Of a stretch of 64,000 nt of DNA, positions 10,092 to 54,429 are shown piece by piece (the stretch's first letter is position 1; the number at the start of each line of letters is the position of its first letter). The notes beneath the pieces are model-generated. The model was not told the DNA's origin. It did not search any database and saw only the letters and a list, made by a program, of their open reading frames with translations. The position numbers and the translations under genes are program-made. This DNA is from Podarcis cretensis (Eukaryota): assembly GCA_951804945.1 (NCBI GenBank), contig OX638153.1:82522001-82586000 (forward strand). The letters are read 5' to 3'.

Positions 10092-10966
10092 TTAACAGAA
10101 AGTAAGCAGAATCAAGTATCTGCTCAAGCACATGACACTACAGTATAAACATCAGTATCTTCAACTCTTCTCTGCCAGTGAATATGACTCTAAGTAACAG
10201 TTTTGTCTTCTGTGTAAAATAATGTTTATGTTTTACTTCCCATAAATTAGAATTTGTACCCTGAAAGATTATCGCAGAACAAACAAGCACAAGCCTGCGA
10301 GAATTCATGGGTAGTTTTTTTAACCCCTTTTCTTGGTGTTCCTTGTGTGTGCTCTGAAACTTCCTCTCACTGTAGAATAGCAGGCATGGGTGTCTTGTTT
10401 CCCCCTTGCAGCACACAGGATTGTGGCTCAGTCCTCCTACTGGGGTTTTATCTCTCAGTGTCTGCAGTATGCCCTCTCTAACATCAGCTGGGCTTCCCCC
10501 ACCTCTTAAAAAGGAAGTGAACATGTGCTGGTCTACTTAGGTGCAGAACCTGTATGTATGACTGCACCGAGAACACAAAGAAGTACTGAGCATATAATTT
10601 TTAATATCACAAATTACTGTTGATTGCTTCATGTACAGTATTTTAGCTTACTTACTGGACACCGTAAAATTAAAATTATGCGCAGATATTAGAAACTGAA
10701 AATACCATTGGCATGACTTAATCCATGGTTGCAAGCCAATTATGGGAATTAACTCCTGGAATATTGTCCACCCACCCCTAAGGGATGCTTCTATTTAGAA
10801 ATATAATTTCCAGAAATTTTGATTCCATGGGAAAGAACCATTTGGGTGGGGTGGGGTGGAGGGCTTCAGGAAAATGGAGGGCTTTCAAGAAATTTTTTTT
10901 ATTTTGTCAGTAGTAATGGGCTAGAAAGAAAGGGATAAAAATCTGTTGCATAAAGTTAATTCTTAC

Positions 10967-11102
10967 CTATTTTGATAACCTTCTGTTCTTTACCAAATCT
11001 CTTCACTGATGTTATATAAAGGTCTCTATTTTTGTCAATAAAAGCAATCTTCCTTTCATTTGTATGTCCTTTTCGGTCTAAGGCAATTTCCATGATTTCT
11101 GT
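10967..11102 (-). CDS. IFT80: IFT80 coding exon c13 ([12 protein letters not shown]...[10 protein letters not shown])
   Basis: Manual translation; TAG acceptor, GTAAGA donor; 136 nt. Confidence 0.96.
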
Positions 11103-11251
11103 CTATATTATAAATCAGTCATATTTCATGGAGTTAGGAATTAAATGCTTTATTTAAAAAACAAACAAGAATGAATTATAGGAATAAACATTTTGCACAT
11201 TGTACACTGAAGGACAGTGAGTTGGTCCAAGAAGAAAACAGGAACCTGGGT

Positions 11252-11435
11252 CAAAACAAAATAAAAAAATTCCTTCCAGTAGCACCTTAAAGACCAACTA
11301 AGTTAGTTCTTGGTATGAGCTTTCGTGTGCATGCACACTTCTTCAGATACACTGAAACAGAAGTCACCAGACCCTTCTATATAGTGAGAAGGTGGGGAGG
11401 GGTATTACTCAGAAGGGTGGTGGGATTGGGTGATT
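11252..11435 (-). mobile_element. Penelope-like element pseudo-LTR fragment
   Basis: 11-bp direct repeat GGAACCTGGGT (11241-11251 and 11436-11446); near-identical to the arms at 51849-52032; contains a hammerhead motif. Confidence 0.8.
11313..11350 (-). ncRNA. Minimal type I hammerhead ribozyme motif (Penelope-associated)
   Basis: GUAU-CUGAAGA-A-GUGUG(CAUG)CACAC-GAAA-GCUC-AUAC: helix I, conserved core, helix II, palindromic AGCU in place of helix III. Confidence 0.8.
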
Positions 11436-11900
11436 GGAACCTGGGTGTTCCACTTTCAGATCCTGCACTTTTATCTACTATACCACACAAGCTCACACTA
11501 TGCAAAGTCAAAGGTATAACTTATACCAGGTCTTGAATCCTCTTGTAATAAATAGGCTGAATTATTTTTTAATCAGAATAGTGTGAAGTCTAAAAGTGGG
11601 CAATATTACATTAATATCTTAAGTCACAGACCACTTTCCTTTAGAGCCATGTTTGGGCTGGGACACATCAGTAGGCCATGGGTCACTTTCAGGTGATCTC
11701 CTTAAATTGCCTGCTCCAGTCCCTAGCCATGCCAAAGCATTTTGGTTGGACCAATCCCAGCACTAACAACTGTGAGTAAAATTGGCCAGGAGACAAAGAG
11801 TTGGTGGGGGGAGAGGTCTCCCTCATTTGAGGGGAAAGGGCCAAAGGAAGTGTTGAAGGAGACTGAGAGATAAAAAAATAATATTTATTATTATTAGATT

Positions 11901-11998
11901 CAGGTAGGTAGCCGTGTTGGTCTGACGCAGTCGAAATAGTAATAATAGCACCTTAGAGACCAAGTAAGTTTGTTCTGGGTATAAGCTTTCATGTGCAT
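11901..11998 (-). mobile_element. Diverged, truncated Penelope-like fragment
   Basis: GGTAGCCGTGTTGGTCTG...AGCACCTTAGAGACCAA...GTATAAGCTTTC, homologous to 51818-51930. Confidence 0.7.
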
Positions 11999-12011
11999 TT
12001 CGTGGCATTTG

Positions 12012-12308
12012 AAGAGGTCAGCAGTTTGAATCCCCATGACGGGGTGAGCTCCCATTGTTCGGTCCCTGCTCCTGCCAACTTAGCAGTTCGAAAGCTTGTC
12101 AAAGTGCAAGTAGATAAATAGGTACTGCTCTGGTGGGAAGGTAAATGGAATTTCCGTGCACTGCTCTAGTTTCACCAAAAGCGGCTTAGTCATGCTGGCC
12201 ACATGACCCGGAAAACCTGTTTGCAGACAAACGTCAGCTCCCTCGGCCAGTAAAGCGAGATGAGCTCCATAACCCCAGAGTTGTTCGCGACTGGAGTCCT
12301 TTACCTTT
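12012..12308 (+). mobile_element. Sauria SINE, 5'-truncated
   Basis: Body matches the other copies; CCTTTACCTTT tail. Confidence 0.85.
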
Positions 12309-12330
12309 TTAAAGGTGCTACTAGACATAC

Positions 12331-12361
<31 letters not shown>

Positions 12362-51814: not shown

Positions 51815-52030
51815 TTACAGATAGGTAGCCGTGTTGGTCTGCCATAGTCAAAACAAAATAAAAAATTCCTTCCAGTAGCACCTTAAAGACCAACTAAGTT
51901 AGTTCTTGGTATGAGCTTTCGTGTGCATGCACACGTATCTGAAGAAGTGTGCATGCACACGAAAGCTCATACCAAGAACTAACTTAGTTGGTCTTTAAGG
52001 TGCTACTGGAAGGAATTTTTTATTTTGTTT
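51815..52030. mobile_element. Penelope-like insertion with inverted pseudo-LTR halves (perfect 86-bp IR)
   Basis: Arms 51849-51934 and 51947-52032; TSD TGTGAAAGACAG (51803-51814 and 52031-52042). Confidence 0.85.
51935..51972 (+). ncRNA. Minimal hammerhead ribozyme motif, identical to the 11313-11350 copy
   Basis: GTATCTGAAGAAGTGTGCATGCACACGAAAGCTCATAC. Confidence 0.78.
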
Positions 52031-54429
52031 TGTGAAAGACAGCTAACTGATCTTCTCACAAATCCACTGCCAGCGAACAGATCATAAGCAGAGAGTTATC
52101 TTGCAGCCTCATACAGTTTAGGAGTCACTTGATGGGTGACACTGGCCATGAAGACAATTTTAAAATAAAATAAAATCAGATGCTCAAAAACTCATTTGGT
52201 GTCTGTTGGCATGAGTGGACATATCAAGATTTTTTGAAAAACTTTACTGTTATAGGCTGCATAGAAAAGTGAAAGCTTTGACCATATGCTTTATTCATAA
52301 TATAGTTTGGAACAGAATGTGAAGGGACTCAGTTTCAGCCTTACATTAATTCTCAGTTTTATAAAATACTGCTCCTTTCTTCCTGTTTTTATTATTTAAT
52401 GAAACCATAAACTGTTCTCAAAGTTAAAGCTGTTTTGCAGTTCTGGAAGGCATTCAAATAAGAGATTAGAGGCCTATTCAAGTACAGCATGTACAGAACC
52501 ATGTCTGTTATATTCATTTGCTACCACAGACCTCTTAAATATTCTGCTCTGATTTTAATGATTAGTCATCAGTATAACGAAAACTAGTAGAAAAAGAGCC
52601 AACATAATTTTTAAGGAACCATTACAGATTGTATTAGATGAATAATTAAAGTGGTAACATAAACATATTTCATATGGGAAGGCAGATTGTAATTCCACCA
52701 AATAGATCTTTACATACAAACTAAACAAACAAAAAGTTATTAATCAGGAAGAAAACATGCTATAAACAAAAAGGAGAAAGGTTATTGTGTATAGCAGATA
52801 ACTGAAGCTCAGCTTTTAACGTATGGCGTTATATGTACTAGAATATGTAAGTGCTGGATTCTAGATAGAGATCATAGTTCTAAACAGAATTTTAGAAAGC
52901 TGAAGAATTATAAAGATGCTAGCAGATACCTGTTATAAATGTCAGTTCTTATAATCCTGCCTATCAGGCATTTCTTGTTGGCAGCAATTCCCTTTGAGGG
53001 CATAGTAGTCCTGTGTAATAAGGTCATCATTACTGTGGGTGACCCCTCTGACTACCTTTGGCTTAGCTCCTGGGATTTTAGAATCTGAATTCCAAGTTCT
53101 ATGGGCATTCTTATAAACTAACCAAAGGGGTTTTCATAGCACTTTGGTTGAGTGGTAGAAGATCCTTTCATACAAAATGGTGGACAACATCTGCTGCTCA
53201 AAATATATCTATTGAGACTTGCTGAACCAGCTAAAAGGAGCATGATGACATTTTAAAAAACTACGCTGCTCAAGTATCCTTGAATATGCTGCTGGGATTG
53301 TAGAGAAGCACTGAGCCCATCCTCACCTGGGATCCAGTTTGCACCCTTATGGAGGGGCAAAAGAGAGAAAGCTTCAGGACTATCCCATATTTATAACAGC
53401 CTGTTTAAAAGGGCTTTTCACTTTCACTACCTCACCTATGTGTTACTGAACCCCCTTCATGGAATGATGCCAACAGCAGTGTTGACTTTGAAAAAAGAGA
53501 TCTGGGAACATACTAAAATGGAAAATCTGCTATTCTGGCTCATCTTACAGGCATACACAAGGAGGCACAATCATCAGGGGGACATTCAAAGTTCAGGTCT
53601 CACACACTCCCGTTGCATAAATGATTTGCCAATGCTTATGTATAAATACTAATTTTAGATTCTGAATGTTATGAAATAAGACTAGTTGCTAGTTGGCAGG
53701 GTAAAAAGGGAACTTTTATTGTAATCCATAAGGATTTTAGAGTCTTTCTTTTGGTTTTGGTTTAACCTTACTTAGTACAATCTTGCATGTGTCAAATCTT
53801 GGAACCCTGTTCCTTTATTGTCACAACTAGTGCTTTGTCAATGAACAGTGACTCTGACAAAATTAGGGAATGGTCTGGACCACAAACCTAAAGTCCCATT
53901 TAGAAACCTGAGTGACTTTTGATAAGAGAAAACCTTTTGGACTTTTTGTGTGGAAGGGGAAATTATCACTATTCTCTCATACCCCCTTATGAAACGGATA
54001 TTAGCATGTCAGAGAACTAATGCTAATTAGTTCTTCTTCTCCTCCTAGTGAGAATGGTGCCAAGTATGTAAAAGTGTTTCAGTAACTTGCATTGAGCCAT
54101 TTGTATATGCTTTCCCAGACACCCAACATAGCACTAAGGCAATCCTTCAATCAGTGCAAGGATTTCTGATTGTGCAATGCAGCATTCTCCCTATCTCCTT
54201 TGTCCTAAATCTGCTCTAGAGGTTCTTAAAACCCTACATATTTGGGCATGTGGTGAGAGGAGAGCAAGTCCCATTGTGCAAGTGGAAATCTTTGCACTGA
54301 CAAATGCCCTCTGTACGGGAAGTTAGTTGTAGAGAAGCATCATGAGCCAAATCTCCTTTGAAGTGGCCCATTCGGTATTTGTTTTCTTGTTTACCATATT
54401 CTTACTGTATCTTATAAATGATAACGAAA

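What the first reader, a model, noticed from the sequence alone, without database searches (positions are those of the whole stretch)
11313..11350. Intact hammerhead ribozyme motif in the sense strand of the IFT80 pre-mRNA
Seen (minus strand): GUAU CUGAAGA A GUGUG CAUG CACAC GAAA GCUC AUAC. This gives helix I (GUAU/AUAC), the CUGANGA and GAAA cores, a perfect helix II, and a self-complementary AGCU where helix III should be, with predicted cleavage after CUC. Established: Penelope-like retroelements carry such minimal type I hammerheads, which are thought to cleave as dimers. Inference: sitting about 210 nt upstream of the exon c13 acceptor, this is a potential self-cleaving site inside a ciliary gene intron, delivered by a recently active family.
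Basis: partly seen in the sequence, partly recalled or inferred. Interest (0 to 1): 0.85.

Follow-up and report, generated by a model that had tools for sequence, protein, structure and literature searches.

The report
Penelope-type minimal hammerhead in IFT80 intron
The hammerhead ribozyme motif is really there, but it is one ordinary copy of a well-known, high-copy Penelope-like retroelement ribozyme that is not expected to cut on its own, so it is unlikely to affect the IFT80 gene.

Summary
A 38-nt minimal type-I hammerhead motif lies at 11350..11313 on the minus strand, with the predicted cut between 11317 and 11316. It is sense to an IFT80 exon whose acceptor lies 211 nt downstream.

It is not a chance motif. 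A structural descriptor finds it twice in the window and never in 300 shuffles. The second, identical copy is at 51935-51972.

The motif sits inside a 184-nt retroelement insertion (11252-11435) flanked by an intact 11-nt target-site duplication. The other copies in the window carry Penelope-like element (PLE) hallmarks: an inverted 5'-truncated arm and an optional 31-nt tail.

Every published hallmark of the PLE "min-HHR" is present: an extra nucleotide between A9 and G10.1, a G10.1-C11.1 pair, a palindromic AGCU in place of helix III, and a 4-bp helix I.

Rfam hammerhead models do not detect it. Folding does not favour the active fold, as monomer or as dimer. Published tests of such ribozymes show no cleavage by single motifs, protein dependence in an Anolis PLE, and no RNA-seq ends at that element's cut site.

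No read evidence could be obtained here. The scan has already noted many such copies in this genome, 13 of them by the words hammerhead, intron and sense.

Verdict: an ordinary, probably inert member of a known kind.

The parts
11313..11350 (-). Minimal type-I hammerhead motif (min-HHR). Helix I is GUAU/AUAC. It has the CUGAAGA box, a bulged A, a 5-bp helix II with a CAUG loop (a 14-nt perfect palindrome), the GAAA box, and AGCU in place of helix III. C17 is at 11317 and the predicted scissile bond is 11317|11316.
11252..11435 (-). 184-nt retroelement insertion that carries the motif. It is either a 5'-truncated PLE end (pLTR part) or a short non-autonomous PLE derivative.
   Evidence: It is bounded by an 11-nt direct repeat. 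Its 3' 99 nt are 99-100% identical to both arms of the copy at 51.9 kb.
11436..11446 (-). Upstream target-site duplication ACCCAGGTTCC
11241..11251 (-). Downstream target-site duplication ACCCAGGTTCC
11351..11435 (-). Element-internal 85 nt upstream of the ribozyme. It holds TATATAG (11383-11377) and an Inr-like TTCAGT (11356-11351), with 30 nt from TATA to the A. Because it lies inside the TSDs it is part of the retroelement, not host promoter sequence.
   Evidence: PLE pLTRs typically hold promoters (PMC6765202)
11252..11312 (-). Element 3' region downstream of the cut site. It ends in a U-rich run and GTTTTG and lacks the optional 31-nt tail.
10965..11102 (-). IFT80 coding exon (46 codons) downstream of the insertion
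51818..52032 (+). Second young insertion of the same family. It has a 31-nt tail plus an 86-nt inverted arm (51818-51934), then a direct arm (51935-52032) that starts with an identical min-HHR (51935-51972). The junction falls at the helix II palindrome. The TSD is (G)TGAAAGACAG(T/C)TA.
11901..11998 (-). Older, diverged 3' fragment of the same family in the same orientation, 666 nt upstream of the motif. It keeps GAAAGCUU-AUAC and the tail but has no CUGANGA box.

Best explanation
This is one dispersed copy of a Penelope-like-element (PLE) minimal hammerhead ribozyme. A 184-nt piece of PLE-type RNA was reverse-transcribed into the IFT80 intron and left an 11-nt target-site duplication. The piece comprised a promoter-like pLTR segment, the min-HHR and the 3' region, without the optional tail. 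In the parent element the ribozyme is thought to process tandem or multimeric element transcripts. It does so by pairing two units through the palindromic AGCU, which builds helix III, and through swapped helix I strands, probably with help from the element's protein. As a lone unit in an intron it is a passenger. Its core is intact, but it lacks a partner and a stable helix I or III, so it is expected to cleave IFT80 pre-mRNA negligibly or not at all. Shown here: the motif, its strand, the insertion boundaries, the family membership features and the lack of a cis partner. Inferred: the catalytic mechanism and the lack of effect on IFT80.
For: The motif and its positions are. It is non-random: 2 hits against 0 in 300 shuffles, and the 34-mer occurs twice exactly. 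PLE insertion signatures are seen in sister copies: an inverted 5'-truncated arm, a 31-nt tail at one end only, and a TSD. These match the descriptions in PMC8557442 and PMC11167929. All four non-descriptor hallmarks listed by Cervera & de la Pena are present: a nucleotide between 9 and 10.1, G10.1-C11.1, a palindromic 15.2-16.2, and a short helix I. That paper also reports such motifs in turtle and snakes. The Anolis Poseidon_Ac ribozyme, read from its consensus, has the same layout with a different helix II and CG instead of GC at 15.2/16.2, so the pairing is kept through different sequence. Evidence for inertness is as follows. Single min-HHRs showed no detectable cleavage and dimers cleaved poorly. 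The PAc HHR needs its protein, and no RNA-seq reads end at its cut site. There is no second complete core on the minus strand in 64 kb. Helix I has probability 0 in the 184-nt context. The designed double hammerhead scores -11.1 kcal/mol against -30.6 for the dimer MFE, and the intermolecular helix III has probability 0. Fold z-scores are only -1.2 and -0.4. In Xenopus, 44% of HHR-bearing non-LTR retrozyme copies overlap introns. This scan has 13 first-reader notes in this genome that hold the words hammerhead, intron and sense, and the 8 shown describe intronic copies (unchecked AI notes).
Against: No PLE reverse transcriptase or GIY-YIG ORF lies in the window, so the PLE assignment rests on insertion architecture and ribozyme type, not on a linked ORF. 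Only three family copies were available and the young ones are identical, so core conservation and covariation within this family could not be measured. No RNA reads could be examined, so in vivo cleavage is not excluded. Nearest-neighbour folding ignores the tertiary and non-canonical contacts of the hammerhead core. PLE protein or abundant element transcripts in trans could activate it.
Confidence: 0.85

Rival explanations
1. The motif is a working self-cleaving site in IFT80 pre-mRNA. It would cut the intron co-transcriptionally, either helped by PLE protein or by pairing with other copies of the family, and so lower or modulate IFT80 expression.
For: All catalytic core positions are intact and in sense orientation. 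PLE HHRs do cleave as dimers or with element protein. The family looks recently active, so protein and transcripts may exist.
Against: It is a lone unit with no complete partner in cis. Single min-HHRs are inactive in vitro. No cut-site ends were seen in Anolis RNA-seq for the related PAc element. The active fold is not favoured. Cleavage of an intron 211 nt upstream of the acceptor would have to outrun splicing to matter. Sense intronic copies appear common in this genome, which argues they are tolerated.
Confidence: 0.07
2. The complete core of this copy acts as the enzyme half on the substrate-like half of the older fragment 666 nt upstream in the same transcript (GAAAGCUU|AUAC at 11990-11979). 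The cut would then fall at 11983|11982 rather than at 11317|11316.
For: In a double hammerhead, each site is built from one unit's core and the other unit's 16.x-H17-helix I strand (topology worked out). The old copy keeps AGCU, U17 and AUAC in the same orientation.
Against: Only 4+4 intermolecular base pairs would hold it together. Folding gives no support for the AGCU/AGCU helix. CUU is a poorer cleavage triplet (from my own knowledge). It was not verified that no exon lies between the two copies (one search shows only stop-riddled frames).
Confidence: 0.03
3. It is a chance match to the hammerhead consensus, or a conserved host intronic ribozyme of the HH9/HH10 kind, rather than transposon cargo.
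For: Rfam gives no hammerhead hit, so there is no independent model-based call.
Against: There were 0 hits in 300 shuffles against 2 observed. An identical copy lies inside another TSD-flanked insertion 40 kb away. The motif lies between intact TSDs. There is no helix III and no match to the HH9/HH10 models.
Confidence: 0.02

Closest known systems
Minimal hammerhead ribozymes (min-HHR) of metazoan Penelope-like elements (Cervera & de la Pena 2014, PMC4209133; Lunse, Weinberg & Breaker, RNA Biol, cited in PMC6765202)
   Same: Type-I topology. CUGANGA and GAAA boxes. An extra nucleotide between A9 and G10.1. A G10.1-C11.1 pair. No helix III loop, only a palindromic A-GC-U. A short 4-bp helix I. 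Dispersed, mostly single copies in truncated elements. Reported in reptiles.
   Different: Helix II is 5 bp with a 4-nt loop, forming a 14-nt perfect palindrome, whereas the Schistosoma families have 7-8 bp. This exact sequence family was not found in the papers I could read. No activity data exist for it.
Poseidon_Ac (PAc) hammerhead of Anolis carolinensis (PMC11167929)
   Same: It is a lizard PLE. The ribozyme layout is identical: box, one extra nucleotide, helix II, GAAA, a 2-nt palindrome, UC. It has the optional 30-40 nt tail and internal initiation of reverse transcription. Insertions end at a fixed site with or without the tail.
   Different: Helix I, helix II and 15.2/16.2 have different sequences. 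In PAc the 846-codon ORF starts at A9/stem II. Here an AUG in loop II opens only 9 codons. No RT/EN ORF is attached here.
Animal non-LTR retrozymes (PMC7229834; bioRxiv 10.64898/2026.07.22.740005)
   Same: Short non-coding HHR-bearing units derived from PLE pLTRs. The reptile consensus averages 176 bp, against 184 bp here. Monomers are dispersed, often in introns.
   Different: Retrozymes are defined by tandem arrays and circular RNAs. This is a single unit with TSDs, and no tandem copy or circle evidence was found.
Conserved amniote intronic hammerheads HH9/HH10 (Rfam RF02275/RF02277)
   Same: A sense-strand hammerhead inside an intron of a protein-coding gene.
   Different: Those have a stable helix III, loop-loop tertiary contacts and monomer activity, and are conserved at orthologous loci. 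This one has none of these and does not match their models.

Membership tests
PLE minimal hammerhead (min-HHR) | Catalytic boxes C3-U4-G5-A6-N7-G8-A9 and G12-A13-A14, A15.1-U16.1, H17 | tested here: met
   CUGAAGA at 11346-11340, GAAA at 11324-11321, U16.1 at 11318, C17 at 11317 (descriptor)
PLE minimal hammerhead (min-HHR) | Unpaired nucleotide between A9 and G10.1, and a G10.1-C11.1 closing pair | tested here: met
   A at 11339; G 11338 pairs with C 11325; feature listed in PMC4209133
PLE minimal hammerhead (min-HHR) | No helix III loop; palindromic 15.1-16.1 segment that allows dimer pairing | tested here: met
   AGCU at 11321-11318 is self-complementary. However, the predicted probability of the intermolecular helix is 0 in the cofold ensemble.
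PLE minimal hammerhead (min-HHR) | Short helix I (4-5 bp) and extended helix II | tested here: met
   Helix I is 4 bp, GUAU/AUAC. Helix II is 5 bp plus a CAUG loop, with P about 0.89 in the element context.
PLE minimal hammerhead (min-HHR) | Carried by a PLE: TSD, inverted 5'-truncated copy, optional 30-40 nt tail at one end | tested here: met
   The 11-nt TSD is at this copy. The inverted arm plus 31-nt tail plus TSD are at 51818-52032, and the tail also occurs at 11901-11931. Definitions are in PMC8557442 and PMC11167929.
PLE minimal hammerhead (min-HHR) | Linked RT + GIY-YIG ORF of the same family somewhere in the genome | not testable with these tools
   None of the six ORFs of at least 140 aa in the window has a Pfam hit.
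PLE minimal hammerhead (min-HHR) | Core conservation and helix covariation across genomic copies | tested here: inconclusive
   The three young arms are identical, so they are uninformative. The old copy lacks the 5' half. Only the cross-family comparison with PAc shows pairing kept with different sequence.
PLE minimal hammerhead (min-HHR) | Self-cleavage (as dimer or with protein) | not testable with these tools
Literature on relatives only.
Rfam hammerhead families (RF00163, RF00008, RF02275, RF02276, RF02277) | Covariance-model score at or above the gathering threshold | tested here: not met
   No hammerhead hit at gathering on the whole window, nor at E<=10 on 701 nt or 86 nt. This is expected, because these models include a helix III.
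Non-LTR retrozyme | Tandem head-to-tail units bounded by HHR cut sites; circular RNA | tested here: not met
   It is a single unit between TSDs, and no adjacent direct copy exists. Circular RNA is not testable.

The most novel reading that the evidence does not exclude
The intact sense-strand core is conditionally active. When the family's PLE protein or transcripts are present, or by pairing with the substrate-like half of the older copy 666 nt upstream in the same intron, it would cut IFT80 pre-mRNA. That would couple retroelement activity to the dosage of a ciliary gene.
Probability: 0.04. Interest if true: 0.6.

Novelty: new member of a known kind. Interest (0 to 1): 0.15.

Why it matters
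As it stands it matters little. It is one more dispersed copy of a ribozyme class known since 2014 to litter non-mammalian vertebrate genomes, and intronic sense copies appear common and tolerated. It is useful as a clean, young, TSD-bounded example for asking whether lone min-HHRs ever cleave host pre-mRNAs in vivo. If they did, thousands of genes in PLE-rich genomes would carry conditional cleavage sites.

Tried and rejected
- Rfam cmscan at gathering threshold, and at E<=10 on 701 nt and on 86 nt, gave no hammerhead family. The only hits were noise: snoRNA and lncRNA models at E 1.7-8.4.
- My first fixed-spacing pattern had the wrong spacer length and found nothing. This was corrected.
- The metagenome scan with a tail-based pattern returned one locus (L001). 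It is a chance match inside what looks like a coding region, unrelated to this family.
- The search of earlier findings by sequence was blank.
- Lunse et al. (PMC5785218) is not held, so it is cited only through the review PMC6765202.
- The Pfam scan of the six longest ORFs found no RT or endonuclease.
- Chance motif and HH9/HH10-type host ribozyme were considered and rejected (see rival explanations).
- The IFT80 gene model was not assembled.

Full report
**1. Observation**

The minus strand from 11350 to 11313 reads GUAU-CUGAAGA-A-GUGUG-CAUG-CACAC-GAAA-GCUC-AUAC. In standard hammerhead numbering this gives:
- helix I 5' strand at 11350-11347
- C3-A9 at 11346-11340
- an extra A at 11339
- helix II at 11338-11325, with G10.1 at 11338 and C11.1 at 11325
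- G12-A13-A14-A15.1 at 11324-11321
- G15.2-C16.2-U16.1 at 11320-11318
- C17 at 11317
- helix I 3' strand at 11316-11313

I wrote a descriptor requiring both boxes, a helix II of at least 4 bp, a palindromic helix III substitute, H17, and a helix I of at least 4 bp. It hits exactly two places in the window: this one and 51935-51972(+). It hit none in 300 dinucleotide-preserving shuffles. The 34-mer occurs twice with zero mismatches.

**2. Gene context**

The stretch 11102..10965 (minus) is an open frame of 46 codons. It follows a TATAG acceptor (AG at 11104-11103) and precedes a GTAAG donor. It matches IFT80 residues 461-493 of PDB 8bd7_I and 5n4a_A at E 6e-4. The motif is therefore on the sense strand and ends 211 nt upstream of that exon. 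I searched this single exon by reference only. I built no spliced model and did not check the exon number.

**3. What carries the motif**

An 11-nt direct repeat, ACCCAGGTTCC, lies at 11446-11436 and at 11251-11241. It brackets a 184-nt insert (11435..11252) made of three parts:
- 85 nt upstream of the ribozyme, holding TATATAG and, 30 nt on, an Inr-like TTCAGT
- the 38-nt ribozyme
- a 61-nt 3' region ending in a U-rich run and GTTTTG

The copy at 51.9 kb is a separate insertion with its own TSD, (G)TGAAAGACAG(T/C)TA. It consists of an inverted 5'-truncated arm (51849-51934) preceded by a 31-nt extension (51818-51848), then a direct arm (51935-52032) that begins with the ribozyme. The two arms meet at the helix II palindrome. 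All three young arms are identical apart from one T in a T-run.

An older, diverged 3' fragment lies at 11998..11901 in the same orientation. It keeps the tail but lacks the CUGANGA box.

Three features are the published signature of Penelope-like element insertions (PMC8557442; PMC11167929): a TSD, an adjacent inverted 5'-truncated copy, and a 30-40 nt tail present at one end only.

No RT or GIY-YIG ORF is in the window. I therefore cannot say whether this is the truncated end of an autonomous PLE or a short non-autonomous derivative. Its 184 nt is close to the 176-bp mean reported for reptile non-LTR retrozyme consensuses, but it is not in tandem.

**4. Comparison with the known ribozyme class**

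Cervera & de la Pena (PMC4209133) defined the PLE min-HHR. They listed features that emerged beyond their search descriptor:
- a conserved G10.1-C11.1 pair
- a palindromic 15.2-16.2 segment

They separately described a short helix I for these motifs. All of these are present here. They also report such motifs in turtle and snakes.

The Anolis Poseidon_Ac consensus shows the same layout across its tandem junction: CUGAGGA, one extra U, a 6-bp helix II, then GAAA-CG-UC. Its sequence differs in every helix. That is modest cross-family support that the pairings, not the letters, are what is kept. In PAc the long ORF starts at the A9/stem II AUG. Here the AUG in loop II (11332-11330) opens only nine codons.

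Rfam's hammerhead models include a helix III, which is probably why none of them reports this motif even at E<=10 on an 86-nt stretch. It is a member of the literature-defined min-HHR class, not of an Rfam family.

**5. How it most likely works, and whether it works here**

In the dimer model, the AGCU of two units pair to form helix III. Each catalytic core then docks on the other unit's U16.1-C17-helix I strand (topology checked). Two observations argue against this happening at this copy.

First, there is no partner. No second complete core lies on the minus strand in 64 kb. The minus-strand reading of the 51.9-kb copy, and the old copy at 11.9 kb, offer only the substrate-like half.

Second, the fold is not favoured:
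- The 38-mer folds at only -6.8 kcal/mol.
- In the 184-nt context helix II forms (P about 0.89) but helix I has probability 0, because the CUGAAGA region pairs elsewhere.
- In a 54-nt context the centroid sequesters C3-A6 in a UCAG/CUGA hairpin.
- Neither fold is more stable than shuffles (z -1.2 and -0.4).
- The designed double hammerhead scores -11.1 kcal/mol, against -30.6 for the dimer MFE. That MFE instead zips the two helix II palindromes together. The intermolecular helix III has ensemble probability 0.

These energy models ignore hammerhead tertiary contacts, so they lower the odds of activity but do not exclude it.

Published experiments on relatives point the same way. A single min-HHR gave no detectable cleavage, and dimers or trimers gave little. 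The PAc ribozyme cleaved only with its protein, and no public RNA-seq reads began or ended at its cut site. A review summarises the dimer requirement and the low rates.

**6. Commonness**

In Xenopus, about 44% of HHR-bearing retrozyme copies overlap introns, although they are relatively depleted there.

This scan has already logged 57 notes with hammerhead and Penelope in this same genome. One is a follow-up that judged a sister insertion an ordinary member of a high-copy lizard repeat. Another 13 first-reader notes hold the words hammerhead, intron and sense, and the 8 shown describe intronic copies in other genes. These are unchecked AI notes, and I use them only as an indication of copy number. 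So the scan has found this before on other DNA of this genome.

**7. What could not be done**

A metagenome pattern scan gave only a chance hit. Family-level conservation and covariation therefore remain untested.

**8. Verdict**

The best explanation, at about 0.85, is a young, ordinary PLE-type insertion whose minimal hammerhead is a catalytically latent passenger in the IFT80 intron.

The residual novel reading, at about 0.04, is conditional cleavage of the host pre-mRNA. It would need direct end-mapping or biochemical evidence.

Noticed in passing
window 11351-11435 (minus): The TATA box (11383-11377) and Inr-like TTCAGT (A at 11353, 30 nt downstream) were flagged by another first-stage note as a Pol II promoter pointing into IFT80. 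They lie inside the TSD-bounded retroelement, so this is the element's own pLTR-type promoter region, not host sequence. A transcript starting there would begin 3 nt before helix I of the ribozyme.
   Followed up: partly
window 11246-11273 (minus): The element's U-rich 3' end plus the duplicated target reads as a long pyrimidine tract followed by CAG|G (AG at 11247-11246). This looks like a 3' splice site 143 nt upstream of the real acceptor. Using it would add 143 nt (not a multiple of 3) containing stop codons. This is a pure sequence observation; no expression data were examined.
   Followed up: no
window 51818-52032 (plus): A sister insertion forms a perfect 86-bp hairpin (51849-51934 pairs with 51947-52032). 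The 12-nt loop, GTATCTGAAGAA, contains helix I and the CUGAAGA box. The inversion junction sits exactly at the 14-nt helix II palindrome, which suggests template switching at that palindrome.
   Followed up: partly
window 11901-12342 (minus): The older tail fragment (11998-11901) directly follows a roughly 300-nt SINE-like body (about 12300-12010) that has a tRNA-like end. A weak inverted tail fragment lies at 12309-12342 (79% over 34 nt, E 0.13). This is either a SINE inserted into an old inverted PLE insertion or a composite element using the PLE tail.
   Followed up: no
window 11303-11332 (minus): An AUG in loop II of the ribozyme opens a 9-codon frame (MHTKAHTKN, then a stop). This echoes Poseidon_Ac, where the long ORF starts within the ribozyme. 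Here it is too short to encode an RT or endonuclease.
   Followed up: partly
window 11480-11500 vs 11313-11329 (minus): Host flank just upstream of the insertion (GUGUGAGCUUGUGUG) is partly complementary to the ribozyme's 3' half. In a 384-nt fold this abolishes helix II (P about 0). It is probably a coincidence.
   Followed up: no
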